In this document: positions 33,755 to 55,827 of the stretch, one piece after another
Layout: the number at the start of each line of letters is the position of its first letter
Position numbering within the stretch: the first letter of the stretch is position 1
NCBI GenBank assembly: GCA_047495785.1
Contig: JBLDXI010000029.1
Location: 3,472,001-3,536,000, forward strand
Direction of reading: 5' to 3'
DNA: 64,000 bases
DNA from: Lepidodermella squamata
Lineage: Eukaryota > Animalia > Gastrotricha
Translations under genes and position numbers: made by a program
The notes under the pieces: generated by a model
Databases searched by the model: none
Told to the model about the DNA's origin: nothing
The model's input: only the letters and a program-made list of their open reading frames with translations

Positions 33755-34205
33755 TGATTGCGCGAGGACCACAGGTCCCCTTAGGGGACGGAGGCCCCCA
33801 TAGACAAGCCGCGCCAGCGCGTATGCTATACGCACCGAATGGTGAGAGAGGTTATACGAGAAACAAAATCATGTGCTATTTCACAAACTATGACAGATAG
33901 AAAAAAATAAAAAATACCAAAAAATCAGCCGCGGTTCCAAATGATAAACAAAGATTTTTCAGCTATACGGCATGAACAGCTGATTTTTAAAAAATAAATA
34001 ACGAAATAACGCGAATTGTTATGCAAATTTATTCATTACCTTGACCTTACGGCGCTAGGTCACGAGAACCACCGTGCGCGCGCGGCGACACTTACTGAGC
34101 TATTACGCCTGATTACGCTAGAAGGGCCGTATCGATAGCGCGCATTACATTTTAAAGACTTTGAATTTGCAGCCCACTTGCCTCCCTCCCCGGGGGGAGG
34201 GAGGC
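33755..34205 (+). other. 5' terminal module of element A with hairpins
   Basis: TGATTGCGCGA start; hairpins gtcccc-tta-ggggac (33775-33789), gcgtat-gct-atacgc, and a 12-bp GC stem at 34180-34205; homologous to 55828-56296. Confidence 0.8.
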
Positions 34206-34225
34206 TTCTGACATCTGCTCAGCGA

Positions 34226-36095
34226 AATCAGGCGTTGTCAGGCGAATCGAGTGCATTTTGAATGGTAACGCCATGACGTACAGCCGCGGAGATACACGTT
34301 AGAAACCAGTTTCGACGCACACACGCACCACAAAAGTGGTTCGGCTACGAACCATTTCTTTGGAAAATCACAGAAAAATCAATTTCGTTCCGATTTTTGC
34401 AAATCAAGTGTCATTTTAACAGGCGCAAAATTCCCTACAAACGCAGCCTGGTTTTCAGATGAACGCGAACGATAGCGTTGAGCGCGCTCATGAAAACGTT
34501 ATTTACAAGCCATTAAAAATACGCGAAGTAGTGCGCGCGCCTGTGTGTGCGAGCTTACGCCATGTAATACATTTTTTCTTTAATTATACGCACTCATAAA
34601 CAATAACCGCTGCTGAATCAGGCGTTGTCAGGCGAATCGAGTGCATTTTGAATGGTAACGCCATGACGTACAGCCGCGGAGATACACGTTAGAAACCAGT
34701 TTCGACGCACACACGCACCACAAAAGTGGTTCGGCTACGAACCATTTCTTTGGAAAATCACAGAAAAATCAATTTCGTTCCGATTTTTGCAAATCAAGTG
34801 TCATTTTAACAGGCGCAAAATTCCCTACAAACGCAGCCTGGTTTTCAGATGAACGCGAACGATAGCGTTGAGCGCGCTCATGAAAACGTTATTTACAAGC
34901 CATTAAAAATACGCGAAGTAGTGCGCGCGCCTGTGTGTGCGAGCTTACGCCATGTAATACATTTTTTCTTTAATTATACGCACTCATAAACAATAACCGC
35001 TGCTGAATCAGGCGTTGTCAGGCGAATCGAGTGCATTTTGAATGGTAACGCCATGACGTACAGCCGCGGAGATACACGTTAGAAACCAGTTTCGACGCAC
35101 ACACGCACCACAAAAGTGGTTCGGCTACGAACCATTTCTTTGGAAAATCACAGAAAAATCAATTTCGTTCCGATTTTTGCAAATCAAGTGTCATTTTAAC
35201 AGGCGCAAAATTCCCTACAAACGCAGCCTGGTTTTCAGATGAACGCGAACGATAGCGTTGAGCGCGCTCATGAAAACGTTATTTACAAGCCATTAAAAAT
35301 ACGCGAAGTAGTGCGCGCGCCTGTGTGTGCGAGCTTACGCCATGTAATACATTTTTTCTTTAATTATACGCACTCATAAACAATAACCGCTGCTGAATCA
35401 GGCGTTGTCAGGCGAATCGAGTGCATTTTGAATGGTAACGCCATGACGTACAGCCGCGGAGATACACGTTAGAAACCAGTTTTGACGCACACACGCACCA
35501 CAAAAGTGGTTCGGCTACGAACCATTTCTTTGGAAAATCACAGAAAAATCAATTTCGATCCGATTTTTGCAAATCAAGTGTCATTTTAACAGGCGCAAAA
35601 TTCCCTACAAACGCAGCCTGGTTTTCAGATGAACGCGAACGATAGCGTTGAGCGCGCTCATGAAAACGTTATTTACAAGCCATTAAAAATACGCGAAGTA
35701 GTGCGCGCGCCTGTGTGTGCGAGCTTACGCCATGTAATACATTTTTTCTTTAATTATACGCACTCATAAACAATAACCGCTGCTGAATCAGGCGTTGTCA
35801 GGCGAATCGAGTGCATTTTGAATGGTAACGCCATGACGTACAGCCGCGGAGATACACGTTAGAAACCAGTTTCGACGCACACACGCACCACAAAAGTGGT
35901 TCGGCTACGAACCATTTCTTTGGAAAATCACAGAAAAATCAATTTCGTTCCGATTTTTGCAAATCAAGTGTCATTTTAACAGGCGCAAAATTCCCTACAA
36001 ACGCAGCCTGGTTTTCAGATGAACGCGAACGATAGCGTTGAGCGCGCTCATGAAAACGTTATTTACAAGCCATTAAAAATACGCGAAGTTGTGCG
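34226..36095 (+). repeat. Tandem array 1, 390-bp unit, ~4.8 near-identical copies
   Basis: aatcaggcgttgtca recurs at 34226, 34616, 35006, 35396 and 35786. Confidence 0.97.
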
Positions 36096-36525
36096 CTTAC
36101 GGGAAGTAATAATTTTTACATTCGTTATCTATTTTCCCTCTTTCATCGTGTTGGATTTCTTTTATACGTTGTCTTGAGTACGTGTTGATTGTTTTTCATT
36201 TTTTTTGCTAGCATTGATGCTGAAATTCATGACATGACGTTATAATTGATGTTTCATCCGCTGACATTGCGTCACACCTGTATTCAAGGACAATACACCT
36301 GATAATTGATGAAGTCTTGTGTAATACAAGTCATCGATGTCGACCGGCGTATACTGACTCATGATGCAATTGTCGGCGGAGTGATCGTTTCTCGCCGTCT
36401 GGCGTTATATAAGCAGTTACTTTTACGCTCGATTTTCGTCTCCAAGTGCGGCGATTTCATTCAGCGAATCTTTTCTGAATTTTAAACGATTTAACACGAT
36501 TATCAACGTTTTAAACGACCATATC

Positions 36526-37695
36526 ATGTCGAAAACTGAAGAGTAAGTTTTTGTCCCTTAACGTTGTGCTTTCCTAATACGGTACATTTTTGATAACAGT
36601 TTCTCAATGGTGGGCATGTATTTGAAGTCGAACAAGCTACAGAAGGCTGCGGAAGAAGTCAATTTCGAATCGAAGCTGATAAGTATCGACGCTGTTTCTT
36701 CGGACCCCACTGACGGTCGGCGTATCGAAGGCGTGCTGCTTCACGCGAAGAAGCGAAACTGTGACACTTCGGGCAACCGTTTGAAGCCTTCAACGCCACA
36801 AACAAGCCGTGCAAATTCTCGCAGCGATGAGGCGTATTTACGCTTCTTGGTTTTCAGGTACGTAGCTTGAAATTCGTGCCTAGCAAATAACAATTTTATC
36901 CTTTTTAGTTGCGTCGATGATAGCAGCGAAGTTTTCGTTGTCGTTATCAAGGACAGTCCCGCGGGCCGACTTGCATTGTCGTTTGGAGATAGGTTAACAC
37001 CCGGTGCGCGTCTTTCAATCAGCAATCCTGTTTTCGTGAGCATCTGGAAATCAATGAAAATGATCAGCACTGACTGTCTTGTGCCAGCGATCTCGTCTGT
37101 CCCGCGCAACAAAGTCGAATTACCTGTTGAAGGCATCCCTCTTGCCGAGCGATTCCACGCTTTTCGCGTCGACATCGACCGCGTCGAGGTTCTGGAGGTG
37201 GCATTTTGCACTGCCTGTGGCCGAAGCTGCGACGGCCGTTACGGCACCGCTTGTACTTGTGTCGGAGGATTCCGCTTTGTCACTATCAAATCGCTTCCCG
37301 GCGTGCGTATCCGCGCAGCTGCCTTCAACGGACTCAGTTGTGCGCTGTATTACTCCGTGGATCTGATGCGGAGCATGTTCACCGATGAAATATTTCAAGG
37401 CGATTGCGATTATGGCGCTATCACCCGCCACATCCGTCGCTCTTTGGAAAATCATCTTGGCGGTTTCCGCGCAATTTTCTGGACAAAGCCATCGAAGGCT
37501 TCCGGCTCCGATGTTCCATCGTTTAACCGGGTTCACATCGCACGTTTAATTCCGTTAGGCGACCCGTTGCCAGTTTTCGTTGCAGCTGGAAACAGATCTG
37601 CTGCTGCCCGCGCTGACGCTTCCAATGCACTTGCTGCTGACAATCAATCCAATGGAAATGAGGAAAGCAGTGGTCCGGTCAACGGCGGAAACTAG
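36526..37695 (+). CDS. Putative RPA-like OB-fold ssDNA-binding protein with Zn ribbon (353 aa; exons 36526-36542, 36600-36857, 36909-37695)
   Basis: Phase-compatible GT-AG introns, poly(A) signal at ~37793, beta-strand pattern plus CTACGRSC..CTC. The OB-fold call is inference. Confidence 0.6.
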
Positions 37696-37889
37696 AACAG
37701 ACAAATCTCAGCTCGCATGTTGTTACTGCTTCCAATGATATCTTAAGACTAATCATATTGTTGTTTCATGATAATGACCTTGTGTTCTGTCAAATAAAAA
37801 CTCGAATTAGCCGAACTTTGTTCTTTTTAATTTATTACTATGAGTAATTTAAAAATTCGAAGCTTCCTATGGCAGAAGATAGCAATAGC

Positions 37890-38583
37890 GTCAGGCGAAT
37901 CGAGTGCATTTTGAATGGTAACGCCATGACGTACAGCCGCGGAGATACACGTTAGAAACCAGTTTCGACGCACACACGCACCACAAAAGTGGTTCGGCTA
38001 CGAACCATTTCTTTGGAAAATCACAGAAAAATCAATTTCGTTCCGATTTTTGCAAATCAAGTGTCATTTTAACAGGCGCAAAATTCCCTACAAACGCAGT
38101 CTGGTTGTCAAAGGAACCCCAGCGATAGCGTTGAGCGCGCTCAAACGAACGCTATTCACAAGCTAATAAAAATACGACAAGTTGCGCGCGCTAGTGTGTG
38201 CGAGATTTCGCCAAGTAATAATATTTTTTTTCAATTATTCGCACTCATAAACAATAACCGCTGCTGAATCAGGCGTTGTCAGGCGAATCAAGCGCATTTC
38301 GAATGGAAACGTTGTGATGTACAGCCGCGGAGATACACGTCAGAAACCAGTTTTGACGCACACACGCACCACAAAAGTGGTTCGGCTACGAACCATTTCT
38401 TTGGAAAATCACAGAAAAATCAATTTCGATCCGATTTTTGCAAATCAAGTGTCATTTTAACAGGCGCAAAATTCTCCACAAACGCAGTCTGGTTTTCAAA
38501 TAAACGCGAAAAAGAGCGATGAGCGCGCTCATATAAACGATATTTACAAGCCATTAAATCTTTGTGTGCCTGTGTGTGCGAGG
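37890..38583 (+). repeat. Tandem array 2, ~1.8 units, hybrid of the 390- and 398-bp variants
   Basis: First unit has the gtgcattttg..gttagaaacc variant; second has the gcgcatttcg..gtcagaaacc variant. Confidence 0.9.
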
Positions 38584-38917
38584 TTATTAGTACTGCCACG
38601 GATTTGCAGCCGATTCTCTCGCGGATGTCACATGCCTTTCATCATTCTATTACGCTGATCAGTTTCTGATTCAAGCGCTGAAGGTCACGCTGCCATTTGC
38701 GTCATCGGTCACCGTTTTTAAGTCTGATCATTACACGTAACTGTCGGCAGCTATGTCGGCAGCTCAATAATGGCGACCAATATAACGGACGCAACGGCAG
38801 TGTCGCATCGGCATCTAGAAGTGCAGTTATTAAGTGTTAATATTTCTGATTTCCGATGTCTTTCCTGTAATGGCCCATGTTTTCCTTAATAACTTTTAAC
38901 CTTTTTTTAGAAATTAA

Positions 38918-39496: not shown

Positions 39497-39816
39497 GAAA
39501 AACGGGCCACAAGAAAATTGGTGGGCCTGGAACGGACGTTTTTCATCAATTAGAAATGTAAAAAAGGCGATATCACCCCTTCCGTAGAGTTCCCCTCTGA
39601 AGAAGGGAACTTTACCGCCCCTCGTTCACGAAGTTCGAATACAATATAAACAAAGAAAGTATTTCATTCAACAGCACTTAAAAGTCGAACAAAAATGATG
39701 AGGGTGCATAAAAAGGAAGCACGGAGAAACTCGGCAGAAAAAATGGAGCCCTCGAACGGTTTGTGAGTGAGGCTGTAAAAAGCTGTTTGACAGTTGAAAC
39801 ATCGACAAATTGCTAA
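39497..39816 (-). repeat. Inverted internal copy of element A's 3' UTR/terminal module (pairs with 55501-55823)
   Basis: Reverse complement is alignable over ~320 bp including the gttccc..gggaac hairpin; the terminal CTGGA is not intact. Confidence 0.92.
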
Positions 39817-39824
39817 AGAGCAAT

Positions 39825-42800
39825 TCACTCGTGCGCAGGGCACGGCAGGTCATAAAAATCCCGATAGAAATCGGGCTCTGCGGCTTTCAGTTTCGTTAAC
39901 TGCGCCTTCAGCTTGTAAGCCTCATAGACAGGAAGGCCGCAGTCTAGAAATTTTTCCAGGCCGAGAAAGGCTCGGAACGTTGTGATTTTATTTTGTACAT
40001 ACTTCTTCTTGAACGTAAACCGTTCGTCGATATACTGGAAAAAATCTTTCTTCGATTTTATAAGCTTGTCAGCCTTAAGGCACTTGTAAATTTTTTCAAA
40101 TGCCTCGCCCATCAGCGATTCCTGTCTCAGGTGAAGTGATTTCAGATGAGCGGAAACCCGCTCCATGTTAGCGATGATCACAACTAAGCTTTCCGTGTCG
40201 TTGACGCCGTCGGAGTCCACGACGCCAACGTCGAAGGCCGTTTTAGTGGACCGGGTTTCCAGAAGAAGCCGTTTGAGTCCACTGATGGTACTGACATCGT
40301 ACTTCGTACCATTCGCCTGTCAAATCAAACACATGGTAATTATAATGAGGGTTTAAATACTGGGTTTAAATACCTCGAAGAAGTCAAGCGGCGTCCCCGC
40401 TTTTTTACGCGGTGTCTTGCTCGCCTTTTTGCCGTCTTCTTTCGTTTTAACGCTGTCAGAGTTAGCGCAATTCGCGGCCGCGCCGGCTTTTCTATGACCG
40501 ATTTTTCGACCGCCAGGAATGTCATGCTCCGTGACGAATTTGCGCACAGCCTCGATGAGGTTTTGCTGACGTTTGCTGCCGCTTTTAGGAAGATGGGAGC
40601 ACTCAGCAACGAATTGAACGGCTTTAGCCAGTACTTCAGGCGCATAACCGTCACCGACAGCTGGAAAGGAAAGTAAGTGGAACAGAAAATTCAAACTCGA
40701 TCCGATTTTTGCAAATCAAGTGTCATTTTAACAGGCGCAAAATTCTCCACAAACGCAGTCTGGTTGACAAATGAACCCCAACGATAGCGTTGAGCGCGCT
40801 CAAACGAACGCTATTCACAAGCTAATAATATTACGCAGAGTCGTGCGCGCGCTAGTGTGTGCGAGGTTACGTCTAGTAATGAAAATTTGTTAATTATTCG
40901 CATTTATTGGAGCCAGTTAACAATAACCGCTGCTGAATCAGGCGTTGTCAGGCGAATCGAGCGCATTTCGAATGGAAACGTTGTGATGTACAGCCGCGGA
41001 GATACACGTCAGAAACCAGTTTTGACGCACACACGCACCACAAAAGTGGTTCGGCTACGAACCATTTCTTTGGAAAATCACAGAAAAATCAATTTCGATC
41101 CGATTTTTGCAAATCAAGTGTCATTTTAACAGGCGCAAAATTCTCCACAAACGCAGTCTGGTTGACAAATGAACCCCAACGATAGCGTTGAGCGCGCTCA
41201 AACGAACGCTATTCACAAGCTAATAATATTACGCAGAGTCGTGCGCGCGCTAGTGTGTGCGAGGTTACGTCTAGTAATGAAAATGTGTTAATTATCCGCA
41301 TTTATTGGAGCCAGTTAACAATAACCGCTGCTGAATCAGGCGTTGTCAGGCGAATCGAGCGCATTTCGAATGGAAACGTTGTGATGTACAGCCGCGGAGA
41401 TACACGTCAGAAACCAGTTTTGACGCACACACGCACCACAAAAGTGGTTCGGCTACGAACCATTTCTTTGGAAAATCACAGAAAAATCAATTTCGATCCG
41501 ATTTTTGCAAATCAAGTGTCATTTTAACAGGCGCAAAATTCTCCACAAACGCAGTCTGGTTGACAAATGAACCCCAACGATAGCGTTGAGCGCGCTCAAA
41601 CGAACGCTATTCACAAGCTAATAATATTACGCAAAGTCGTGCGCGCGCTAGTGTGTGCGAGGTTACGTCTAGTAATGAAAATTTGTTAATTATCCGCATT
41701 TATTGGAGCCAGTTAACAATAACCGCTGCTGAATCAGGCGTTGTCAGGCGAATCGAGCGCATTTCGAATGGAAACGTTGTGATGTACAGCCGCGGAGATA
41801 CACGTCAGAAACCAGTTTTGACGCACACACGCACCACAAAAGTGGTTCGGCTACGAACCATTTCTTTGGAAAATCACAGAAAAATCAATTTCGATTTGAT
41901 TTTTGCAAATCAAGTGTCATTTTAACAGGCGCAAAATTCTCCACAAACGCAGTCTGGTTGACAAATGAACCCCAACGATAGCGTTGAGCGCGCTCAAACG
42001 AACGCTATTCACAAGCTAATAATATTACGCAGAGTCGTGCGCGCGCTAGTGTGTGCGAGGTTACGTCTAGTAATGAAAATGTGTTAATTATCCGCATTTA
42101 TTGGAGCCAGTTAACAATAACCGCTGCTGAATCAGGCGTTGTCAGGCGAATCGAGCGCATTTCGAATGGAAACGTTGTGATGTACAGCCGCGGAGATACA
42201 CGTCAGAAACCAGTTTTGACGCACACACGCACAACAAAAGTGGTTCGGCTACGAACCATTTCTTTGGAAAATCACAGAAAAATCAATTTCGATCCGATTT
42301 TTGCAAATCAAGTGTCATTTTAACAGGCGCAAAATTCTCCACAAACGCAGTCTGGTTGACAAATGAACCCCAACGATAGCGTTGAGCGCGCTCAAACGAA
42401 CGCTATTCACAAGCTAATAATATTACGCAAAGTCGTGCGCGCGCTAGTGTGTGCGAGGTTACGTCTAGTAATGAAAATTTGTTAATTATCCGCATTTATT
42501 GGAGCCAGTTAACAATAACCGCTGCTGAATCAGGCGTTGTCAGGCGAATCGAGCGCATTTCGAATGGAAACGTTGTGATGTACAGCCGCGGAGATACACG
42601 TCAGAAACCAGTTTTGACGCACACACGCACAACAAAAGTGGTTCGGCTACGAACCATTTCTTTGGAAAATCACAGAAAAATCAATTTCGATTTGATTTTT
42701 GCAAATCAAGTGTCATTTTAACAGGCGCAAAATTCTCCACAAACGCAGTCTGGTTGACAAATGAACCCCAACGATAGCGTTGAGCGCGCTCAAACGAACG

Positions 42801-44820: not shown

Positions 44821-45792
44821 TTTCAAACTGCTCTATAATAGATTTAAATTATTTTATAAAATTGTTATTTAGTCGATAATGGACCAGTGAAACAACAAGT
44901 GAAACAACAGTAGAAATGCGCCAACAGAAAACGGTCATACAGTGCTGACTGCTACGTGTCTTTAATTTTCATCCTGTCGTGCAACAGCTGACTCTCAAAC
45001 AAATTTAATCTCAGCCCATATCAGCATGAACAGTCTTGCAGTCTTGTGGAACAGACTCAGCTGGCCCCAATTTTCCTGAGAGATTAGATGTCTGCAGTCC
45101 AGCTGTTGCTTTTGGTCCTAATTCTTTGCTCTAGTTCTTCTTGCTCGACTGGAGCATTCGTTACCTGTCCAGGGTGAAAGCCGGCGAAAGCTCTTTGTAG
45201 CTTTATAGCGAAGAAACAAACATGCTGCAAAGAAATAGCAAAAGGCTAAAAAATGCTTACACATGACACAACAGCCGTGATATATTAGAAAACAACATTT
45301 TTCTACATAATCGACATGAAGGCTGAATGAAGTACTGATTCCTGAAAGCATTTCCAGCTCCTGCAGATCGTTTATGCCTCCATCCAATTGTTAACTCTGT
45401 TCAACTGCCCTCCCTGACATATACAATATCAAGATATATCAATGTCTGGGCCTTTTAGATATTGTCGATTATAGACTGATCCTATTTGCTTACCATGCCT
45501 CCTGCGAAACTAAATGACCAAAATGCAAAACGCAATGCCTCGACGACTTCTGGTGCTCCTGTTGCCGATGCCACTACGAGTCAATCAACTTACTTGCACC
45601 CGGTACTTCGATTGCAAGACAATCGAATTTCACCCAAAAAACGCAACAAATTGTAGAAACAACGTTTCACAGATGGCAGCTACTATTCAGTATTCAGTTA
45701 CAAGCTTTCGCATCTTCAGCCATCATAAACTCAACTTGAGACTTGAGACTTACTGTTGTTCTCTTTGTTTTTAGATCTTAATTTCATCAATT

Positions 45793-46065
45793 ATGACGCA
45801 TTCCGCTGATGACTGCAATACAGATACTCCTACACCTACTACTGCTCGACCTATTCCACCAAAGCTGAACCATGATGACTCAGGAATAATGTATCTTAGA
45901 GGATTCCAGCACCTCAGTGAGCCTTACGACAGCTATCTCGTCAAGTATTGCTCCGGGAAAGAAACCAAATATATGCCTCTCTTGCACCACGTTTTTCTTG
46001 CCAGCACTGAGGTTTCGCCGTGGAAGCTTTTCTACACGACACACAGCCCCAAACCGAGTTCCTGA
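45793..46065 (+). other. Mini-ORF made of three scrambled Rep-derived peptides
   Basis: LNHDDSGIMYLRGFQHLSE, SYLVKYCSGKETKY and SPWKLFYT match the RepHel segments LNHNSSDMLYRRGFEHISE, SYLVKYCAGKEVRY and SPWQLFYT. Confidence 0.7.
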
Positions 46066-46278
46066 AGCTTTTTGTCTTTAATAAACTGGCTTAATAACTG
46101 GCTGTCATTAATAAACGTTACACTGTTCATCCCTGCGTGCTATAGTTTCAAATAAATATTCATCTAACTGATAAAATATATCCTAATGCTGATGACATTG
46201 TTATCTTCATCCATTGCCTTTGCATTTGCCTTTGTCCTTCAAATATAGATATATTTGATACAATATATAGATATAACA

Positions 46279-49200
46279 ATGTCTCGAAAAGACCCTTTCA
46301 AACCGCGTAAAGGCAATAGGACTTGCACTTGCAGCATCAAGGGATGTGGCCAAATTGGAGTCGATAGGCGGACACATTGCTATGTCTGTGAGAAGCATCA
46401 TGAAAAGCCGTTTTGTCGCATTTCTACACCCGTGTTGAACGATCAAACACCTGCCACGTCCGTTCCTCACGTTGAATCTACTCATTCATGTATTAACTTT
46501 ACAATCAGCCGTACATATTTGAATTTTTGTAGCTTTAGCTGCTACCGCGATCCCGCCAAGGAGATCATATGCTGAAGTGTTGACAGCACATCAATGCCCC
46601 GATAGTTCTCCAAGCGCTGAAAAACTCATGCGCCCTGATGGCCGCAACTCTGCATCATATCTAAATCCTGAAGATTCAAGTTACTTTCTGGCTTGCAGGA
46701 AATTCAAAGATACAACTTTATTTTTACTATTTTAGCCATTACCACTGCGCATTTCGATGATTGCGGCGAAGCCGTTCCTAATGAAGCGCTGCCGTCCTCA
46801 AGCTTTTCGTCCTCTTCTAACACGGAGTGGTTACGCGAAGCAGCAAGGCTCAACCATCTGCAGCTTGTCGACAATGTTGGCAGGGGTGATTGCCAGTTTT
46901 TATCCGTCAGTGATGCTGCAAGGCAGCATGGGTTCAAGTACTCCTTCCTTGAATTAAGGAAGCTGGCGCAACAGCAGCTGCTCACCCGCGCGTATGACTC
47001 TTTTATCGCGCCTGACCCGTTAGTCCTTCAACAAGCGAGAAATAATGGGCAGCCATTGCCTTCGACCACTCCTGATGAGCTCGTACGACGTATAGCTCTG
47101 CCTGCTGCCGAGAATGGAGACTGGGGTGACAACGTTTCCCTCCGGGCACTGGCGGATAGCTTAAATGTCACAATAGCATTATTCGACTCCGAAAACAGGT
47201 TTACATTGCAGCGCTTTGGCAGTGTTGGTCCGACTCTCTATATTGGTAGAGATCATTTGGCTTCGCATTATGTGGCTATGCTGAGAGACGAAACGCCCAT
47301 GTTTCAACTTTCTTCTTCCGTCGACAACCGATCAACAACTTCTGTGATAGACGAAGTTGGAAGAGATTCTACTAATAACATCTCTTGCTTCGAAGCGGGA
47401 ACTTCGTCAATTCAAACAACTGGCGCGGCCTCCTTTTCTGCTGGGCAGCCCATTAGCCCACCAAACTTAGGAATAAATTCTTCCAAAGTTACATGTCAGT
47501 CAAATGGAAATAGCAACCACAATCCTTCGCGTCATAAAAAATCAGGTCAGTTTCATATTTCGGCCTTTATTAATTCCTTCGTCAATGCACTTTTATAGAT
47601 GAAATTGCCGCAATTAATGAAGACCAAGATCTTCCTCCTTTGTCTCCTACTGAAATATCATCCACTTCACTCAGTCGCAGGCGCGCAGTCGCAGTCGCAG
47701 GCGCAGTCCAGTCTCAAACTAGAAAAGAAGTTGGCCCAACCAGATCAACAACTTCTTCAAAAATGAGTAACCAGGATCGTATTACTGCGGACACAACCAG
47801 TAAGTCTTCCACCTACTTAACAATGTCAATTTTTAGTTCAGTCGTTATTAATGCTCATAATAAAGCTACTTCAAAACAAGATGCTGCCTCTGATCAACCT
47901 CAGTGTTCTCTATGCAGAAGAAACGCTACTTCTTTTTATCCTCTGGCACTACAGATAATCTGTGAGGAAGTAACGGTGAAGAAGTACGGTGCACTAGCTC
48001 TGCGATCGAAACATCGAAACCTTGTTTTGTGCAACTGCTGCGAACTTCATTTGCTGAAAGAAAACAAAGCGCTGTCGTTCGAGGACGCGTGGCCTGCGGT
48101 ATTGTATTCTATTTTTTTCGACGACAAATATCGGGAGGTAGCTGAACACCTCAAGCACATTGTTCCTTCGACGATACGGCAATCTTGGGCTGTTGAAATT
48201 GGCAAAACAGGGCGCGATCTTATGACAGCAGAGGAGCCTTACTTCACTGATGTCAGCGATTACTATCACAACATGGAGGAGCGAGCTTACCGATCTGCTG
48301 GTATGAAAGCATTGCATCTTTATTTTTAAAAGCATATCCCTTTCATACAGGTGCGTTTCGACGTCAGATGGACGACTTTTGTTGCCCCCAGGTGAAGTGT
48401 GCTCTTGGGTGCTGGAACTGGCCTGAGTTTTGTCGCAAGATCCCGGTCAATCACCTAATTAACCACCTTACACGCTTGCGCATCGGCAACTCTAACCACC
48501 GGTTGCTAACAGCTGCCCGACGTGACTATCCGAATAAACCTAGCATATTTCGCGGCTGGAAAATTTCGCCTGCAATGGTCGTCGACAGATCACTCGGCTT
48601 ATGCTTTCTTGTATGTGATGGTCATAACGACGCTGAATTGAAGAAGCGATTTTTTCACATTCCGATAAATCCCGCTCACGACGACACTCTTCCACAACAG
48701 CTCGAAATCGTTGCACCGGTTGTTACAAGTCCGAACATTGTTAGAAAAGGCAGACTTGGTACGTACTCCTCATCAGTTCCAGTAGTTTCAGTCGTTGGCG
48801 GGTATCAAGGATTGAGTAGCTTTACTATGTCCCCGACGGTGAACACTCCACCGATCAGTGGCGATTCGATAGCACCGCAATTGATGGCTGCTTATCTACG
48901 TCCAGAGATTCAGCGAAGCTTTGCAGCAAAATGTGATATATTTCATGTTTCGACTCTATTGGCTGCCTTCCAATCCCAATATGACGCTCTGAAATCGCTA
49001 GCCGATGCGGCGCTGGAAGGAGCAACGTTTATGGATGTAGCGGATGCTTTTCATACGTGGGCCATAATCCGAAAGGACGCAGTCGGGCCTAGTGGCGCTG
49101 TTCCAAATAACAACAACGACTTGAATAAGCAGTCTATCAAAGAGCTTATTATTAACGCTGTCCACAACGCTGACGATTTCGGCATGAGACCCACGGCTGT

Positions 49201-52200
49201 AAAGCTCCGCTCTCCTAACGAAAGGGTTTCACTGTTTCAAAATATATTAAATGCATTGCTCCACTGTCGACCAGTGCATAGAAACGCGCTTTCACATCAT
49301 GTAACATCAAGCGGATTTCGAATCGGGAATTTGCCCTCCATCAAACTTCTATCTATGGCTTCGTATATTTCTGCCGATCAGCCGACAGCGATAAATGCAC
49401 GGGCCTTTAGCAACCAGCTCTGGCTGGCAAACGATGAACACAAAAATACCGTGGACAACACGCTAAATATCTTGACATCACTCTGTCCAAAAATAGTTGA
49501 TGACGAATTGAATCATACTGGCAGCGAAATCATCGACGTTCAACTGCGCATTGGGATAGACGAGTCTTCGCAACAACGCATTTCCAGGAGCACTTCCAGA
49601 CAAGGTACTATTCTACGTTTCATTGATATAGCGCCCTTTTCACGTCCATGCAACTTATTGATAGAATATTACTTTTCTGCATGCATACATCTCACCGTCT
49701 TTATTTCTCTCTCCGTCAGGTTCAAGCAGTCATCTGGTTGTCAACATCAATGATGAGGAGATCGCTTTGTCATCATACAAGCCAAACGCCGATATCACTT
49801 TCTGCAAGGCTGATTCTTCTCAAAAAATTTCTACTTCCAACTTTCCTCTTTACGTCAATGGTTCGCATCTTCTGTACTTACAAATCGAGTTACCTCGCTC
49901 TGATGGCGATCGTCCTGCAAGCAAGGTCCTGATGAGGTGGAACGGCGACTTTAATGGTTGGTGGTCGATCAACTGCAACGGTGATGTTACCAAAGAGACA
50001 CAACTATCCGCTGTTACTGGGAATGTTTTGTACGCGATTTATGCCACACCTGGCGACAGGTCTTTTGAGCACCGAGCAATACTGTCATCAATTGGTGGTC
50101 AACGAATTGCTGTCTGCAAATCTCATGTACTTAAACACGATGGCAACGGTTTTATCAAAGTGCCGCGACAACTAGCCGTTAAATGTTGCGCAATTTTGCG
50201 ACGCGGACGACGTCCTTTACAGTGTGGGAAAATGGCGTATCTCAGGTGTCCAGATGGTATTCAGCATGGCCTAACCTGCCAGTCAGGCATCTGCAACGAC
50301 TGCTATGGCAAATTATCTCGGGACAAGTCGCATCGAATAGGTCAGCCGTCAGCCGTCAGGGCTAAAAATTACCGTCAACGCCGTCGGCAATTGACGGACG
50401 ATGAAGACGGCGTTGATCCGAGCATTTCCATTGAAGAAGAAAGACGGCTGCGAGGCGAGCCGGAACTTGAAGACCCACTGCAAGTAGAACCTTTGCCGGT
50501 GGTTTGGAACGAAGATTGCCAAACGGATAACGATGTTTTGTTGAACGAAGTTATCGACCAAGAAGAAGCTCTTCCGTCCACAATGACGTTAACAAATCCC
50601 CATTCTAAGATTCCCAGTAAGTATCTGCTTACAAATTATTTTCGTATACTGGAGCGAAGGCGTGCTCCACATCAAAGTGCACGTTCTCATTTTCTGCTGC
50701 AACAAATCGTACGTGCGGGAAATGCACCCGCTTCATCACTGCTATTCCCGGAGGCTAACACTCTGCCATCGATATTTTACAATTCTTACAAAAAATCAGT
50801 CCCTGGAGCTTTACCTCACCACCTGTATTGTTCGCCGGATTCTAACAAATTTCGTGGTATTGCTAGCTTGAGTGCTCACAACAAAGTGCGAGTAGCTGAC
50901 GGTGATTTAGCATCGTCGAGAACTTGGCAATCTCTTCACTGGGCTTTTGACACTACCGTTGCTGAGAAACTCAATCACAACAGTTCCGATATGTTGTATC
51001 GTCGAGGATTCGAGCACATTAGCGAACGAGGCGGATTTGGTATCGATGCCGCTCAAACTGCCCTCGAGTATGATGATTTCGACTCGTCGCGCAAAATCAA
51101 GGAGCTTGCGGCGACTATGAAGGCGTCCCCCTGGCAACTGTTCTATACATTTACTGCCAACGACAGAGGCTCTCCGGGTTTGAGGCCATTCATCAATCGT
51201 TTGAAGATTGCTTCTCAGCTGACAACACCAGCCACTGCCGAAGACAGAACCAATTACACCTTGAAGCAGCGTGAAGTTGATGCCTTGGAAATAGATGACA
51301 AATTGTTCCAGCAGCTCTACGAGTCTAATTTCTTTCTTATCAACAGCATTTGGCGGCGAACTATCTATCACGCGATTCGGTTCATTGAAAAAAGCCCGTC
51401 TAAGTTGTTGGGAGAAATCGACTCGCATTTTTCTCGTATCGAATTCCAAAGTCAAGGATCGCTGGGGAACAAATGCCATGTACATGGTGGTGTGTCAGTA
51501 AAAAGCCGTGACGGCGACGAACCCGTATCTCATAAGATTTGCCTTGATCCTGATCTGTTCTTTTCCGAACAATTCGGCACTGATTACGATTCCTTGCTGA
51601 AGGATGGCCTCGTCGAGGACTATGACGACTTCGAAGATCTTCGAAAGTTTATGGCCGTTGTTACGCGTCACGTTTGCTCCAATGCTGGTGAAAGGTGCCT
51701 TAAGCAGCGAGGCGAGAACGGCGAGGAGATATGCAGAGTTCGAGCACACCCGAACAGCGAAGAATACTGGTACGAAGAAAAGCTCGACCTATATGAGGAA
51801 TCGGTGTATGAGAAACTTGAGTCTTGTGGTTTAGCTGAACGTATCCCTGACTCTGCTGAGGGTCATGTCAAATGGCGATTAAAGCATGACAAACTAAAAG
51901 CAGGCGTTCATCATTATCCTCTTCGCAACCAAGAATGCGGCGTTAAAATGTTGCCTACAATACCTCTTTTCGCCATCATGATGCGCTGTTCAAGCAACAT
52001 TCAAGCGTGTGACGAACGTTTCATGGTTAGCTACCTCGTCAAGTACTGTGCCGGAAAAGAAGTACGATACAACCCATCCGTAAAAGCTACCAAACACGTG
52101 AGTGAAGTTGTTATTGATTCGGCTAAAGCACCTTTGCCCAATCTAAAAATTACTGGCGTCGCTCTTAACGAAGAAAAGCGTCAAAAAGCGCTCACTAACG

Positions 52201-55200
52201 TCATTCAGACGAACATGATGGAGGTAGCTACAACGGAAATGCATTGGGTGGTTGCAGGCTTCCCGTATACATATACTAACGTCGACCACGTTCATGTTAA
52301 CACTCAACCGCCGGAACATCGATTGGCTTATAAATCTAGAGCCCCACGGACAAAGCTTCAACCAGGTAGGACTTCAGCTCTCACAAATAAAACTTGTCAA
52401 ATAATGTTATTTCAGGTGTCGATGCATCCTTCGATCCTAATGCCGCACGCTACAAACTCAACCAAATATGGCGTTTGTTTACAGTCGATCAAATACAGTT
52501 GGCACGAGAATACGTCATGTCAAAGTTGAGGCCAGGTGCTACTGAGCGGTTCAACATAAGACCGCCTGAGCTACTGATCTTTGACAACCTCGAGATTTTC
52601 CACCTCATATTCATTGCGTCAACTGAAACAGCTAAGCTTCCGCTGCATGAAACATTTCATCTTTCACCGTTCAAAGATGCGCTCAATCGATATTATCGAA
52701 TTCGCAGCAACAGTATACTGGCGGCAATTCAGTTCTTGCGAACGAGGCCTGCAGATCATCCTGCCCGACAGCTACTGCTTGACCTTTTCGAAAGGCTCTG
52801 TGAAGGCGATCAGGAACTCACAAAGCGATACGTACATCAAACAAACGCTGTTCGAACAGTTACTGTCCCGTCAAGTGTGACACCCTACAATCGTCAGAAA
52901 TTTTTGTATCACACGATTATGACTTTGGGCTCCATGGAGAATGAGTTGCAAACCTTTTCTTCGTCTAACTTCGCCGTCAACTTCACGAATGCGCGCCTCG
53001 TTACTCCTCCGGAGGAGTTCGACGGTGCGCTAGTTCAGCCATCTTTGCGTGCGGAGGTTGATGACATTTTTCGCCGTCTCATCATTGAGCAACTTGTTTG
53101 GTTACCCGTTTCCGCAAAGAGGCTCGGCAACTATATCACCAAAACTTGGGAAACTCTTCAAGACTACTTCTTTGGTTCGCACAGCAATGATCACGATGTG
53201 CCACCTATTTCCAGTTACGCTCTCAAGAGCCAAGCCAACAAGAAAATTTTCGACGCTGAGCGGATCTTTAAAGACAGCTTGCTTCAAACAAGCCATGCTC
53301 AACTGGCGCATAAAATGATCCTACCTTCTATAGACTTGTTTCGCAGTGCAATGCCTGAAAATCCTGTCGAATGGAAACCTGCTATTCTGCCTTCGACAGG
53401 CTTGTTTCCTTTAGCTTTTTAAATTCTATTTTTATGTTCACTGTTCACAGGTCAGTCTTCTGAATCATTGAAACAACAGCAGTTAGCCCTCAGCCATGGC
53501 TTGAACAAGATTGACGATCTGTTGTGCCATCGAAGTGCCTACAAGCATTCTGTTTTTGTCGGCCCACCAGGCGCTGGTAAAACCTTCTTGGCTCAAGTTG
53601 CTGCTCTGTACGCACTTGGCAAAGGCTTCAACGTTTGCCTCACGTCGCTCACATCGGAGAGAGCAAGATCGCTTGGAGGCCGTCATCTTCATCTTGTTTT
53701 TCCGATGCGTGTCCAGCAATCGTCCTACTCGCACGCCATGTTAGAGGCACAGGAATGCATCCGATCGCTCGGCAGAGACCCCGTTAAGGCAGAGTTACTA
53801 TACAGAACCGATGTGTTCGTGATCGAAGAAATCGGCTTGGTCTCCGCCGAGATGTATGCATTACTAGACGCTGTCATGAAATATGTCATGGGAAATGACT
53901 TAAAGTTTGGTGGCAAGCTGGTTATCGCTACCGGTGATCACGCTCAGCTGCAGCCAATCAATGGTAGGCCTTTCTGGCTGTCAACCAACTTGATGTTTTC
54001 TTTCGACGTCGTTGTGCTAACTCATTACGTTCGTTCCGCCGAAGACGAAAACCTCCAAGCAATCCTTCAAATCCTTCGACAGCCAATCATCGACGAGCGA
54101 CAGCGAAACGTTGTCTGTCACGTTTTGTCACAGAAGGCACGCTTTTTTCCTTCATGGGATAAGGTGCCTGAAGGCTTGATTCGTCTCGTTACAACTCGCA
54201 GCGCGGAGAAGAAAGTAATCGACGATTACCTCGAGAAAAAATCACAGCAAACCGATGTCATCAAATGTCTAGCTATCGACGAGTTTCAGAGAAGTTCGGA
54301 CAACTGGACGGAGACGACGAACAAGGCGCACATAAAGAAACTTGATCGTGTTTGCTTGGAGCCCAAAGAACTGGTGCTTTTTCTCGGGGAAATTGTCTGC
54401 ATGACTTACAATAACATCGCGTCAGATCCTGGTCAGACTTTCTCGCAGGGGCAGCTTGGTGTTATTGTTTGTCTACCTGAAGACATCGCCAACAAGAAAG
54501 CGACTGTTTCTGTTCGCCTGATTCCACCAGGTATTCGCCCGTCGCATGATGTTGACGAGAATTGGCCGGTTATCAAAGTGCAGCGACATCATGGAATACC
54601 CATTATCATCGGGTCAGACGCCATGCGAGCTCGACGGTTACAGTTCCCCTTCCGTTACTACATCTGCACCACGGTGCATCGGATAATGGGCGCAACCGTC
54701 GAGGAAGGTGTTGCCATACAAATATCGGACGTCGACAAACAGTTTCGAATGTGGGAGAAGGCTCAGTTTCTTGTGATGGTTTCTCGCTGCCGTTCGCTAA
54801 ATCTCATCGCCTTCGTGAGTGCTAGCAAAAACGACACCCTGAGAGCGATCAATGCCATCATGATGAAGGATAGCCCATATGAAAAGGCTGTTGTTGACCG
54901 GTTGTGTCGATTGGATATACTGTCTAATCGCGCAGAATCGGTTGACGTTGGCTCGCCGGTTTTTTATGTCACCAATTCAATCTCGCCCTCTGTTGTGAAC
55001 GGTGTAGTCTACCACATCGTTTCCCAAACAAGACCGTTCGCGTCTTACATCGGCGAAACAATGTTCTCAGCTGAAAAGAGACTCAGGCAACATAATTCTG
55101 GCGGTGGCGCTAATTTCACGCGTGGTGATACGTGGTTCCTTCTTGGTATCGTACATGGATTTTCTGATGCGCGAGCGCGAAAGACGTTTGAGAACAAGGT

Positions 55201-55477
55201 TCACAGGCGACTAACTCCACAGCTTTTCCCTTGGCAAGTCCGTCTCGTCATTCAGGAGCTTGTTGTTCAGCTGAACAAGTTGGTGCCTGCTTCACAGCAA
55301 CTGACCATCGTCAACTTCGGCCGGGTCGACGAATTGCAAGTTCGTGCGTTAGCGGCGAATCGCAACCAATCTGGACCTTTCGTTTTTATCAAACAGGTTT
55401 CTTCACTTTGCCTTACTTCTTCAGCTTCTTAATTTTTACTTACACTACAGGATGAAAGCGGCGAAGACGATTTATGA
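46279..55477 (+). CDS. RepHel transposase, ~2,900 aa: Cys/His-rich N-terminus, OTU protease, Cys-rich regions, HUH Rep, PIF1-family helicase, SLX1-like GIY-YIG nuclease
   Basis: OTU GRGDCQF..WGD..HY; Rep motifs LFYTFTAN, RIEFQ..G..HVHG, YLVKY; helicase GPPGAGKT, IEEIG, FGG..GDHAQLQP, TVHRIMG.T, QFLVMVSR; nuclease VY..YIGET..RLRQHN.G.GA..T..W..GF..FE. Phase-consistent exons 46736-47545, 47599-48300, 48351-49604, 49720-52365, 52416-53399 (GC donor), 53451-55396, 55451-55477; the first two exons are less certain. Confidence 0.92.
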
Positions 55478-55689
55478 GACGATTTTCTTTTACTATGTCA
55501 TTAGCAATTTGTCGGTGTTTCAACTGTCAAGCAGCTTTTTACAGCCTCACTTATGAAACGTTCGAGGGCTCATTTTTTTCTGACGAGTTGCTCCGTGCTT
55601 CCTTTTGATGCACCCTCATCATTTTTGTTCCACTTACAACTGCTGTTGAATAAAATACTTTCTTTCTTTATATTGTATTCGAACTTCGT

Positions 55690-55827
55690 GAGGGAGGGGC
55701 GGTTAAGTTCCCTTCTTCAGAGGGGAACTCTACGGAAGGGGTGATATCGACTTTTTTTTTACATTTGTTACTGATGAAAAACGTCCGTTCCAGGCCCACC
55801 AATTTTCTTGTGGCCCGTTTTTCTGGA
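55690..55827 (+). other. 3' terminal module of element A
   Basis: gggaggggcg, hairpin 55707-55728, aaggggtg..gacttt, a small subterminal hairpin, then CCGTTTTTCTGGA; homologous to 63343-63503. Confidence 0.8.

What the first reader, a model, noticed from the sequence alone, without database searches (positions are those of the whole stretch)
33755..55827. A 22-kb multi-gene rolling-circle element that fits neither the Helitron nor the Helentron template
Seen: a defined 22,073-bp element with an uninterrupted spliced RepHel, at least three further gene candidates, three arrays of a hairpin-rich repeat and distinctive terminal modules. Known: canonical Helitrons have TC...CTRR ends and some carry RPA-like genes; Helentrons carry OTU plus an apurinic endonuclease and have subterminal inverted repeats. 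This element combines OTU, a separate RPA-like gene and a GIY-YIG nuclease in place of APE, with TGATTG...CTGGA ends. Inference: a distinct, possibly recently active lineage organised more like a small episome or virus than a simple transposon.
Basis: partly seen in the sequence, partly recalled or inferred. Interest (0 to 1): 0.93.

Follow-up and report, generated by a model that had tools for sequence, protein, structure and literature searches.

The report
Giant Helitron-like transposon with GIY-YIG nuclease
This is a real, apparently intact 22-kb rolling-circle (Helitron-like) transposon sitting head-to-tail with an older decayed relative inside a host receptor exon. It belongs to a widespread but barely described branch whose transposase ends in an SLX1-like GIY-YIG nuclease instead of the AP endonuclease of Helentrons.

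Summary
Window 33755-55827 (E1) is a bounded 22,073-bp element. Its left end is fixed by a paralogous empty site. Its right end abuts a second, decayed relative (E2, 55828-63503) with the same ends (5' TGATTGCGCGA, 3' hairpin then CCGTTTTYCTGGA). Deleting 33755-63503 restores a continuous host ion-channel exon, with no target duplication.

E1 encodes a 2,911-aa, 8-exon protein with no internal stop: zinc finger, OTU, HUH/two-tyrosine Rep, Pif1 helicase and a C-terminal SLX1-type GIY-YIG. It also carries one comparatively supported accessory gene (a Cys-cluster protein with a weak RPA70-C-like OB-fold signal) and three arrays of one 390-398-nt repeat.

- The insertion is an E1+E2 tandem of 29.7 kb.
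- An inverted copy of E1's last 327 nt lies at 39497-39819.
- The GIY-YIG fusion is not unique. At least 44 divergent RepHel proteins (ostracod, tunicate, environmental eukaryotes) carry it, and none of 45 scanned has an AP endonuclease or DUF6570.

A distant relative moves as a 25.7-kb unit with the same layout and the same head-to-tail chaining. Nothing supports a virus or episome. Placement relative to HLE1 and HLE2 could not be tested here. Verdict: a new variant of a known kind, of moderate interest.

The parts
33755..55827 (+).
   Evidence: The left end comes from the paralogous empty site and ORF restoration. The right end is the junction with E2, which has the same ends.
33755..34225 (+). 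5' terminal module. It starts TGATTGCGCGA and has a 5' hairpin GGACC-ACA-GGTCC at 33766-33778.
   Evidence: It is homologous to the start of E2. The hairpin is kept in E2 with a different stem sequence, ACCGT-GTA-ACGGT.
34180..34208 (.). Perfect G/C palindrome with core CCCTCCCC-GG-GGGGAGGG
   Evidence: It occurs once in E1 and once in E2 (56274) at equivalent positions, where 0 are expected by chance. It also occurs in the Cyprideis loci L001 and L002.
34226..36096 (+). Repeat array 1 (390 nt x 4.8, 99-100% identity within the array)
36607..37695 (+). Accessory gene, 345 aa. Exons 36607-36857 and 36909-37695, with a 51-nt GT-AG intron. Cys cluster C-x2-C-G-x2-CDG...C-x-C and a KPSK motif. Candidate OB-fold ssDNA-binding protein.
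   Evidence: It is homologous (E 5e-09) to the gene next to RepHel-GIY-YIG in L004/L005. The fold evidence is weak but consistent, pointing to RPA70 DBD-C-type folds. It has no Pfam or PDB sequence hit.
37879..38655 (+). Repeat array 2 (about 2 units, a mosaic of the array 1 and array 3 variants)
39497..39819 (-). Inverted copy of E1's 3' module (92-96% identity to 55498-55823). It lacks the final CTGGA.
   Evidence: No 5' end for a minus-strand element was found.
39828..40715 (-). Two minus-strand ORFs (164 and 120 codons stop-to-stop) that run into the inverted 3' module. Function unknown, with no homologue found.
40682..44597 (+). Repeat array 3 (398 nt x 9.9, 98% identity)
45775..46062 (+). 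Short Rep-like fragment upstream of the gene (motifs YLVKYCSGKE and PWKLFYT)
   Evidence: (D14)
46279..55432 (+). RepHel gene: 8 exons, 2,911 aa. Introns at 46490-46532, 46680-46735, 47546-47598, 48301-48350, 49605-49719, 52366-52415 and 53400-53450 (GC-AG).
46879..47277 (+). OTU cysteine-protease domain (Cys box GRGDCQF, His box ASHYVA)
   Evidence: Pfam OTU E 7.7e-05. The OTU region is shared with P0009, P0012 and P0014.
51132..52061 (+). Rep core: motif 1 WQLFYTFTAND, HUH motif CHVHGG (51474-51491), two-tyrosine motif YLVKYCAGKE (52032-52061)
53561..54900 (+). Pif1-like helicase (Walker A GPPGAGKT at 53561-53584)
   Evidence: Pfam PIF1 E 6e-12. The best PDB sequence match is Helraiser 7lcc.
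55001..55207 (+). C-terminal GIY-YIG nuclease domain (VVYHIV, SYIGET, KRLRQHN, TFENK)
   Evidence: Pfam E 3.4e-07. The family profile matches SLX1 at 3e-09. The motifs are conserved in 47 relatives.
55433..55827 (+). 3' terminal module. Terminal hairpin GGCCCAC...GTGGCC at 55793-55815, then CGTTTTTCTGGA.
   Evidence: E2 has a hairpin of different sequence (GCAAG...CTTGC) at the same place.
55828..63503 (+). E2: a decayed 7.7-kb relative in head-to-tail tandem with E1. It has the same 5' and 3' ends, a 34-nt duplication at its start, and a Rep remnant at 61727-62239.
33406..33754 (-). Host Cys-loop receptor exon, one half. The other half is at 63504-63979.

Best explanation
E1 is an autonomous Helitron-like rolling-circle transposon. 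It belongs to a deep, widespread lineage whose transposase is a zinc finger-(OTU)-Rep-Pif1 helicase-GIY-YIG fusion. It lies directly upstream of an older, decayed relative (E2), and the pair interrupts a coding exon of a host ligand-gated ion-channel paralog.

**Shown**
- The ends are exact and there is no target duplication.
- The coding capacity is intact.
- The HUH, two-tyrosine, Walker A, OTU and GIY-YIG motifs are conserved.
- The end structure is shared with E2, with stem sequences that differ.
- A distant relative moves as a whole 25.7-kb unit and is chained head-to-tail in the same way.

**Inferred mechanism**
1. Rep nicks at the 5' end (A|TGATTG) and attaches through a tyrosine.
2. 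The helicase unwinds 5' to 3' until it reaches the 3' hairpin and CCGTTTTYCTGGA.
3. The second tyrosine cleaves, and the ends join into a circle with a CTGGA|TGATTG junction.
4. The element integrates at ...KGA|T sites. It prefers the end of a resident relative, which mimics that junction, and this builds tandems.

**Inferred roles of the other parts**
- The SLX1-like GIY-YIG supplies the extra nick or branch-resolving cut that AP endonuclease is thought to supply in Helentrons.
- The Cys-cluster/OB protein coats the single-stranded intermediate.
For: - **Ends and empty site:**
- **E2 shares the ends:** it has the same terminal words, 5' hairpin, palindrome and 3' hairpin.
- **Gene model and motifs:**
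- **Family size:** 451 Rep homologues at E<=1e-3. A C-terminal GIY-YIG occurs in 49 proteins, and in 44 of 65 rows spread over the whole tree, with E1 sister to the ostracod Cyprideis torosa.
- **Domain content of relatives:** Pfam on 45 long relatives finds PIF1, Helitron_like_N and GIY-YIG, and never Exo_endo_phos or DUF6570.
- **Type of GIY-YIG:** the family profile matches SLX1 and UPF0213.
- **Accessory gene:** it is conserved next to RepHel in L004/L005.
- **Distant relative:** the L004/L005/L006 copies are 98.9-99.5% identical over 25.7 kb. Each is followed by a diverged 5' module and preceded by a 3'-end-like word.
Against: - Only one full copy is visible, and no copy with a different host flank could be fetched from the same genome.
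- There is no transcript evidence for the introns. One intron needs a GC donor to remove an in-frame TAA.
- The Pfam Rep hit in the window itself is below threshold (E 0.014), and neither the window ORF nor the family profile matches the Rep domain of Helraiser.
- The nuclease and OB-protein roles are inferred by analogy only.
- The E1+E2 tandem could equally have arisen by 3'-end bypass and moved as one piece.
- The internal inverted copy of the 3' module is unexplained.
Confidence: 0.8

Rival explanations
1. E1 is simply a member of the known HLE2 group (Helitron2/Helentron) that captured a GIY-YIG domain. On a proper tree its Rep and helicase would nest inside a described HLE2 subgroup, and its ends would fall within known HLE2 variation.
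For: - HELIANO classed a GIY-YIG-bearing moss family (HelenSM92) as HLE2.
- OTU, RPA upstream of RepHel, hairpins at both ends, a 5' T and internal satellite arrays are all HLE2/Helentron traits.
- Proto-Helentron and HLE2-reverse show that odd end layouts exist within HLE2.
Against: - DUF6570, reported as the HLE2 marker and present even in proto-Helentron, was found in 0 of 45 relatives and not in E1.
- There are no asymmetric terminal inverted repeats in E1 or E2.
- The target is A|T, not T|T.
- None of the 45 longest of the 150 best Rep matches that were scanned carries an AP endonuclease.
Confidence: 0.35
2. The 22 kb is not one mobile unit. It is a pile-up of a smaller RepHel element plus satellite DNA, an unrelated gene cassette and a fragment of an inverted copy, which only look like one element.
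For: - The inverted copy of the 3' module at 39497-39819 and the repeat-cassette-repeat-cassette-repeat layout suggest internal rearrangement.
- There is a Rep-like fragment at 45775-46062.
- Only one full copy was seen.
Against: - Both outer ends match those of E2, and the whole block excises cleanly from the host exon.
- No 5' end for a minus-strand element exists inside E1.
- The accessory gene is conserved beside RepHel in a distant family.
- That distant family's 25.7-kb unit, with arrays and the accessory gene, is 98.9-99.5% identical in three loci with different flanks. Units of this size and layout therefore do move whole.
Confidence: 0.12
3. E1 is an integrated episome or virus-like replicon rather than a transposon.
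For: It is large, has several genes, encodes a Rep protein of the kind also used by ssDNA viruses and plasmids, and has repeated arrays that could be iteron-like.
Against: - No capsid, polymerase, packaging or other virus-type domain appears in any ORF.
- The integration is exact and TSD-less, with Helitron-type ends.
- The Rep is fused to a Pif1 helicase, as in Helitrons.
- Relatives are chromosomal and multi-copy on contigs of up to 1.4 Mb.
Confidence: 0.03

Closest known systems
Helentron / Helitron2 (HLE2 group of Helitron-like elements)
   Same: - The RepHel transposase has an N-terminal zinc finger and OTU domain and an extra nuclease at the C-terminus.
- An ssDNA-binding-type accessory gene lies upstream of RepHel.
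- There are hairpins near both ends and a 5' T.
- There are internal satellite-like arrays, as in oyster and Drosophila Helentron derivatives (PMC7492417).
- Insertion leaves no target duplication.
   Different: - The nuclease is an SLX1-type GIY-YIG, not an apurinic/apyrimidinic endonuclease.
- No DUF6570 is detectable.
- There are no 8-16-nt asymmetric terminal inverted repeats.
- Insertion is at A|T rather than T|T.
- The ends are TGATTG...CTGGA.
- The size is 22 kb.
Canonical Helitron (HLE1; for example Helraiser, PDB 7lcc)
   Same: - It uses a rolling-circle Rep plus Pif1 helicase.
- The helicase's best PDB sequence match is Helraiser.
- Insertion is between A and T without duplication.
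- A 3' hairpin lies about 12 nt before an end reading CTGG(A), close to CTRR.
   Different: - The 5' end is TG, not TC.
- There is an additional 5' hairpin.
- It has OTU and GIY-YIG domains.
- The Rep domain is not detectably similar to Helraiser Rep by sequence or by profile.
HelenSM92 of Sphagnum magellanicum (HELIANO, PMC11417382)
   Same: It is the only published Helitron-like family found in the searchable literature that carries a GIY-YIG domain with RepHel.
   Different: It was reported with short terminal inverted repeats and TT insertion sites, and was described as a domain capture in one family.
Proto-Helentron / HLE2-reverse (Phytophthora, Fusarium)
   Same: The end layout is unusual. 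There is a stem-loop at the true 5' end, and the left copy of an inverted repeat lies kilobases inside the element (3.6 kb there; 5.7 kb in E1).
   Different: Their repeat is about 12 nt and they carry DUF6570. E1's repeat is 327 nt, is absent from E2, and looks like a duplicated 3' UTR/terminal module.
IS91/ISCR and IS200/IS605 bacterial HUH transposons
   Same: HUH-nuclease elements whose target resembles their own end. Here the host flank CTTGA resembles the element end CTGGA, and insertion occurs at the ends of resident copies.
   Different: They are prokaryotic and have no fused helicase or GIY-YIG domain. The target rule here rests on very few junctions.

Membership tests
Helitron-like elements (eukaryotic rolling-circle transposons, any group) | Rep domain with an HUH motif and two catalytic tyrosines | tested here: met
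   CHVHGG lies at 51474-51491 and YLVKYCAGKE at 52032-52061. Helitron_like_N is weak in the window (E 0.014) but is hit in 35 of 45 relatives.
Helitron-like elements (eukaryotic rolling-circle transposons, any group) | Pif1-family helicase fused downstream of Rep in one protein | tested here: met
   PIF1 has E 6e-12. Helraiser is the top PDB match. A single 2,911-aa model spans both domains.
Helitron-like elements (eukaryotic rolling-circle transposons, any group) | No target-site duplication, and a subterminal 3' hairpin | tested here: met
   Exact excision restores the host ORF. The hairpin at 55793-55815 lies 12 nt from the end.
Canonical Helitron (HLE1) | 5' TC and 3' CTRR termini | tested here: not met
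   The 5' end is TG (TGATTG). The 3' end is CTGGA, which reads CTGG only if the boundary is shifted by 1 nt.
Canonical Helitron (HLE1) | Insertion between A and T | tested here: met
   The host site is ...TTGA|TTCGG by comparison with paralog A. This rests on one site, or two if the E1|E2 junction is counted.
Canonical Helitron (HLE1) | Only one (3') hairpin | tested here: not met
   A 5' hairpin at nt 12-24 is present in both E1 and E2, with different stem sequences.
Helitron2 / HLE2 | Short (8-16 nt) asymmetric terminal inverted repeats: the 5' end complementary to sequence just upstream of the 3' hairpin (PMC3627910) | tested here: not met
   No complementary word longer than 6 nt exists between the first 40 nt and the last 100 nt of E1 or E2.
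Helitron2 / HLE2 | Hairpins at both ends and a 5' T | tested here: met
Helitron2 / HLE2 | Insertion between T and T (or T and C) | tested here: not met
   The site is A|T. The alternative registers give G|A or T|G, never T|T.
Helitron2 / HLE2 | DUF6570 domain, proposed as the HLE2 marker (PMC11417382) | tested here: not met
   It was not found in E1's ORFs or in 45 long relatives at E<=1e-3. A very diverged version cannot be excluded.
Helitron2 / HLE2 | Rep and helicase nest in the HLE2 clade on a tree with references | not testable with these tools
   No HLE1/HLE2 reference sequences could be obtained. All 150 best matches appear to belong to E1's own clade.
Helentron | Apurinic/apyrimidinic endonuclease (Exo_endo_phos) domain in the transposase | tested here: not met
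   It is absent from E1 and from 45 relatives. A GIY-YIG occupies the C-terminus instead.
Helentron | OTU cysteine protease upstream of Rep | tested here: met
   Pfam OTU scores 23.6 bits against a cut-off of 23.3. The Cys and His boxes are present. The domain is shared with P0009, P0012 and P0014.
RepHel-GIY-YIG lineage (not formally described; defined here) | SLX1/UPF0213-type GIY-YIG domain at the C-terminus of the RepHel protein | tested here: met
   It spans residues 2758-2844 of 2,911. 44 of 65 tree rows carry it. The profile matches SLX1 at 3e-09.
RepHel-GIY-YIG lineage (not formally described; defined here) | Cys-cluster/KPSK accessory gene beside RepHel, internal satellite arrays, and head-to-tail chaining with relatives | tested here: met
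   These are seen in E1/E2 and in the distant L004/L005/L006 family. Only two families were examined, so generality is unknown.

The most novel reading that the evidence does not exclude
RepHel-GIY-YIG elements may form a third deep lineage of eukaryotic rolling-circle transposons, alongside HLE1 and HLE2. This lineage would have these properties:
- It is present in animals and many environmental eukaryotes.
- An SLX1-like structure-specific nuclease took the place of the AP endonuclease.
- It has its own end rules: a 5' hairpin without asymmetric inverted repeats, and A|T targets or targets that mimic its own junction.
- Its elements are giant (22-26 kb), satellite-bearing, multi-gene units that chain head-to-tail.
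Probability: 0.3. Interest if true: 0.75.

Novelty: new variant of a known kind. Interest (0 to 1): 0.55.

Why it matters
Helitron-like elements are currently sorted into two groups, HLE1 and HLE2, plus a recently reported Paramecium clade. The only extra nuclease discussed for them is the AP endonuclease of Helentrons.

This window gives a cleanly bounded, apparently intact example of a different solution: an SLX1-type GIY-YIG fused to the helicase. The database searches show this fusion is conserved across a large, old and taxonomically wide set of transposases that annotation pipelines label only as 'GIY-YIG endonuclease'.

Three consequences follow:
- It offers a natural comparison for asking what the accessory nuclease does in rolling-circle transposition.
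- It gives termini that Helitron finders built on TC...CTRR ends or ATIRs would probably miss.
- It is an example of how such elements build tandems and carry satellite arrays.

Tried and rejected
- **ATIR search.** A search for asymmetric terminal inverted repeats between the two ends of E1 and of E2 found nothing longer than 6 nt.
- **Minus-strand nested element.** I searched for a reverse-complement 5' end inside E1 that would make the inverted 3' module part of a nested minus-strand element. None was found.
- **Rfam.** A scan of the whole window gave no match, so the repeats are not a known RNA family.
- **Repeat-unit folding.** The z-score was only -1.69, so 'hairpin-rich' is not established.
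- **Word-indexed homologue search.** With the Rep ORF it returned 1 hit, against 451 hits by full HMMER. It is insensitive for this family, and its near-blank result should not be read as rarity.
- **Exact-protein look-up.** The window's helicase ORF is not on record, so other copies in the same genome could not be fetched.
- **PDB searches.** The Rep ORF and the accessory ORF gave nothing by sequence.
- **AlphaFold of the window's own accessory protein.** Mean pLDDT was 36, so the model is unusable. The model of the L004 homologue is only locally confident, so the RPA-like call stays tentative.
- **Cross-family terminal sequences.** BLASTN and terminal-motif searches in related loci found no shared terminal words. 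Only the G/C palindrome is shared with the Cyprideis loci.
- **Bacterial promoter/terminator scan of the 3' module.** This was irrelevant for a eukaryote.
- **Virus/episome reading.** Considered and rejected.
- **Supplementary files.** The HELIANO supplements are not held, so HelenSM92 could not be compared.


Full report
**What is there**

The window is eukaryotic, about 42% G+C, with roughly 50-nt introns and tandem Cys-loop receptor genes on the minus strand.

A self-comparison shows that one receptor paralog (A, 27641-29961) is colinear with a second paralog (B). Paralog B is split into 32342-33742 and 63502-64000, so about 29.7 kb has been inserted into B.

The junctions read as follows:
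- left: host ...GCTTGA | TGATTGCGCGAGG...
- right: ...CCGTTTTCCTGGA | TTCGGCTCG host
- uninterrupted paralog A: ...CCCTGA|TTCGGCTCG

Joining 33754 to 63504 restores a continuous 281-aa reading frame colinear with paralog A's ligand-binding-domain exon. Shifting the join by 1 or 2 nt destroys it. The insertion is therefore exact, leaves no target duplication, and hit a coding exon.

**Two elements, not one**

At 55827|55828 the sequence reads ...CCCGTTTTTCTGGA | TGATTGCGCGAACC.... That is the same 3' end as at 63503, followed by the same 5' start as at 33755.

Alignments show that 55828-56340 is a diverged homologue of 33755-34240, and that 63160-63503 is a diverged homologue of 55480-55827.

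The insert is therefore a head-to-tail pair:
- **E2** (55828-63503, 7.7 kb) is riddled with small repeats. It retains only a Rep remnant at 61727-62239.

**Ends**

Both elements share these features:
- They start with TGATTGCGCGA.
- They have a hairpin at nt 12-24. The stems differ (GGACC/GGTCC in E1, ACCGT/ACGGT in E2), so the structure is conserved but the sequence is not.
- They carry a perfect G/C palindrome about 430-450 nt in. It occurs once in each element where none is expected by chance, and it also occurs in two Cyprideis torosa loci.
- They end with a hairpin followed by CCGTTTT(T/C)CTGGA. Here too the stems differ (GGCCCAC/GTGGCC versus GCAAG/CTTGC).

No complementary word longer than 6 nt links the first 40 nt to the last 100 nt in either element. 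The asymmetric terminal inverted repeats that define Helitron2/HLE2 (PMC3627910) are therefore absent.

The target is A|T, with a 2-nt GA ambiguity. It is never T|T.

**Transposase**

The seven large plus-strand ORFs between 46.2 and 55.4 kb are colinear with full-length relatives by tblastn.

They can be joined by seven short introns with good splice signals: 43, 56, 53, 50, 115, 50 and 51 nt. The last of these (53400-53450) has a GC donor and removes an in-frame TAA. The homologous motif ...W.P......QS..S..EQ..AL is restored exactly.

The model starts at ATG 46279, has its stop codon at 55430-55432, and encodes 2,911 aa with no internal stop. Its parts are:
- an N-terminal Cys/His cluster;
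- an OTU domain, with Pfam E 7.7e-05 and Cys and His boxes present;
- two conserved N-terminal regions shared with relatives;
- a Rep core with CHVHGG and YLVKYCAGKE;
- a Pif1 helicase, with Pfam E 6e-12 and Helraiser as its best PDB sequence match (E 7e-07);
- a C-terminal GIY-YIG, with Pfam E 3.4e-07.

The Rep domain is remote from canonical Helitrons. Pfam Helitron_like_N reaches only E 0.014. Neither the ORF nor a 22-sequence family profile matches the Rep domain of Helraiser.

**The GIY-YIG is a lineage trait**

A full HMMER scan of 1.8 billion representative proteins with the Rep ORF found 451 homologues at E<=1e-3 and 77 at E<=1e-30.

A local profile of the GIY-YIG region finds the domain at the C-terminus of 49 of the fetched proteins. 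The Tyr, Tyr/Gly, Arg-x-x-His-Asn and Phe-Glu positions are conserved.

The family profile matches SLX1 (E 3e-09) and UPF0213 structures.

Pfam scans of 45 long relatives find:
- PIF1 in 34;
- Helitron_like_N in 35;
- GIY-YIG in 10 at E<=1e-3;
- OTU in 1;
- Exo_endo_phos (AP endonuclease) and DUF6570 in none.

On a FastTree of the Rep+helicase core (65 rows, unrooted), GIY-YIG-bearing proteins occur in every major branch (44 of 65). E1 is sister to a Cyprideis torosa (ostracod) protein with 100% local support. Next come an environmental protein, two Styela clava-type (tunicate) proteins and others. Rows without the domain are scattered and are often short gene models.

**Literature**

In the searchable literature, GIY-YIG together with RepHel is mentioned only once. 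HELIANO describes it as a capture in the moss family HelenSM92, which it classed as HLE2.

**Accessory genes**

Only one accessory gene has comparative support.
- It runs from 36607 to 37695 on the plus strand, in two exons joined by a 51-nt GT-AG intron that removes an in-frame stop. It encodes 345 aa.
- It aligns over about 300 residues (E 5e-09) with a 464-aa gene that lies immediately downstream of RepHel-GIY-YIG in a distant relative (L004/L005). They share a C-x2-(C)G-x2-CDG...C-x-C cluster and a W-x-KPSK motif.
- It has no Pfam or PDB sequence match.
- An AlphaFold model of the L004 protein is poor overall (pLDDT 44.5), but its core reaches 70-89. That core retrieves almost exclusively RPA70 DBD-C-type OB folds (Teb1-C, RMI1-C, RPA70-C, CST, MCM) at weak E-values of 5e-3 to 0.1.
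- The model of the window's own protein was unusable.

'RPA-like' is therefore plausible but not shown.

The two minus-strand ORFs at 39828-40715 have no homologues or domains. They run into an inverted copy (39497-39819, 92-96% identity) of E1's last 327 nt that lacks the final CTGGA. No matching 5' end exists for a nested minus-strand element. I read this copy as a duplicated 3' UTR/terminal module, but it remains unexplained.

**Repeat arrays**

The three arrays are one repeat family:
- 34226-36096, 390 nt x 4.8;
- 37879-38655, about 2 units;
- 40682-44597, 398 nt x 9.9.

All lie in the same orientation. Identity is 98% or more within arrays 1 and 3 and about 90% between the arrays.

The unit contains a few short hairpins, but it folds only marginally better than shuffled sequence (z -1.69). 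It matches no Rfam family.

Internal satellite-like arrays are a known Helentron trait (PMC7492417).

**A distant relative behaves the same way**

Three loci from one environmental eukaryote assembly (L004, L005, L006) carry a RepHel about 27-30% identical to E1's. They share a unit of about 25.7 kb (L005 755-26503) at 98.9-99.5% identity. This unit has satellite arrays in its 5' part, RepHel-GIY-YIG in the middle and the Cys-cluster gene downstream.

In all three loci, identity stops at the same base after ...CGCTAGGTGGTC. The sequence that follows differs between loci, yet in each locus it is homologous to the element's own 5' module.

In L005 and L006 the element is preceded by a 3'-end-like CGCT(A/G)GGTGGTC.

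Two conclusions follow:
- Giant multi-gene units of this lineage move as a whole.
- They repeatedly land at the ends of resident relatives, as E1 does next to E2.

**Mechanism (inferred)**

The proposed sequence of events is:
1. The HUH/two-tyrosine Rep nicks at A|TGATTG.
2. The Pif1 helicase unwinds 5' to 3'.
3. The 3' hairpin plus CCGTTTTYCTGGA terminates the process, and the ends join as CTGGA|TGATTG.
4. Integration occurs at ...KGA|T. The host flank CTTGA resembles the element's own end CTGGA. A resident copy's end reproduces the circle junction, which would explain the chaining.

The SLX1-like GIY-YIG most likely provides the additional nick or branch-resolving cut for which Helentrons are thought to use an AP endonuclease. 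The OB-type protein would coat the single strand. The OTU domain may act on ubiquitin or process the protein. None of these roles was tested.

The E1+E2 pair could instead have arisen by bypass of E1's terminator and moved as one piece.

**Classification and novelty**

E1 is clearly a Helitron-like element, but it fails defining features of each named group.
- HLE1: the 5' end is not TC, and there is a 5' hairpin.
- Helitron2/HLE2: there is no ATIR, no T|T target and no DUF6570.
- Helentron: there is no AP endonuclease.

Whether its clade lies inside or outside HLE2 on a tree could not be tested, because no reference sequences were obtainable here.

Nothing supports an episome or virus.

I rate it a new variant of a known kind. 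The anatomy is well documented, the lineage is broad but essentially undescribed, and the finding is of moderate interest.

Noticed in passing
Its 5' end carries an exact 34-nt tandem duplication (55833-55900). Its interior is filled with small repeats that also occur at 21.2-22.6 kb of the window.
   Followed up: yes
window 39497-39819 (and 55498-55823): A 327-nt inverted copy of E1's 3' module lies 5.7 kb inside the element, directly after two minus-strand ORFs. It lacks the final CTGGA, and E2 has no equivalent. It might be a duplicated 3' UTR. In a single-stranded intermediate it would pair with the 3' end.
   Followed up: partly
window 34184-34201 and 56274-56292; L001 4031-4051; L002 26991-27011 and 28027-28047: A G/C palindrome (CCCTCCCC...GGGGAGGG, with flanking arms changed on both sides in a way that keeps pairing in E2) is conserved at the same place in E1 and E2 and near RepHel genes of the ostracod Cyprideis torosa. 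It is a candidate cis-acting site.
   Followed up: partly
window 27641-33742 and 63502-64000: The window holds tandem paralogs of a Cys-loop ligand-gated ion-channel gene. The E1+E2 insertion split a coding exon of paralog B, and that exon is otherwise still open. Further tandem paralogous ORFs without Pfam hits lie at 7.4-19.7 kb.
   Followed up: partly
window 27047-27634 (-): This ORF has a strong glycosyltransferase family 6 match (E 1.2e-33), next to the receptor paralogs.
   Followed up: no
window 45775-46062 (+): A short Rep-like fragment sits just upstream of the RepHel start. Its two Rep motifs are in the wrong order (the two-tyrosine motif before motif 1), and it is 85% identical over 33 nt to 52029-52061.
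   Followed up: no
L005 755-26503 (also L004, L006; ENA ERZ25074608): A 25.7-kb RepHel-GIY-YIG element occurs in near-identical copies in an environmental eukaryote. It has its own satellite arrays (about 355-nt units at 1215-2750 and 4988-5512), the Cys-cluster gene, and a small ORF with a weak GDSL-lipase hit. Its ends are GGGGCGC...CGCTAGGTGGTC.
   Followed up: partly
L001 (Cyprideis torosa contig): The helicase-GIY-YIG part lies on the plus strand (76-8129), while the zinc finger/OTU/N-terminal parts lie on the minus strand (8224-10296). This could be two elements tail-to-tail or an assembly rearrangement.
   Followed up: no
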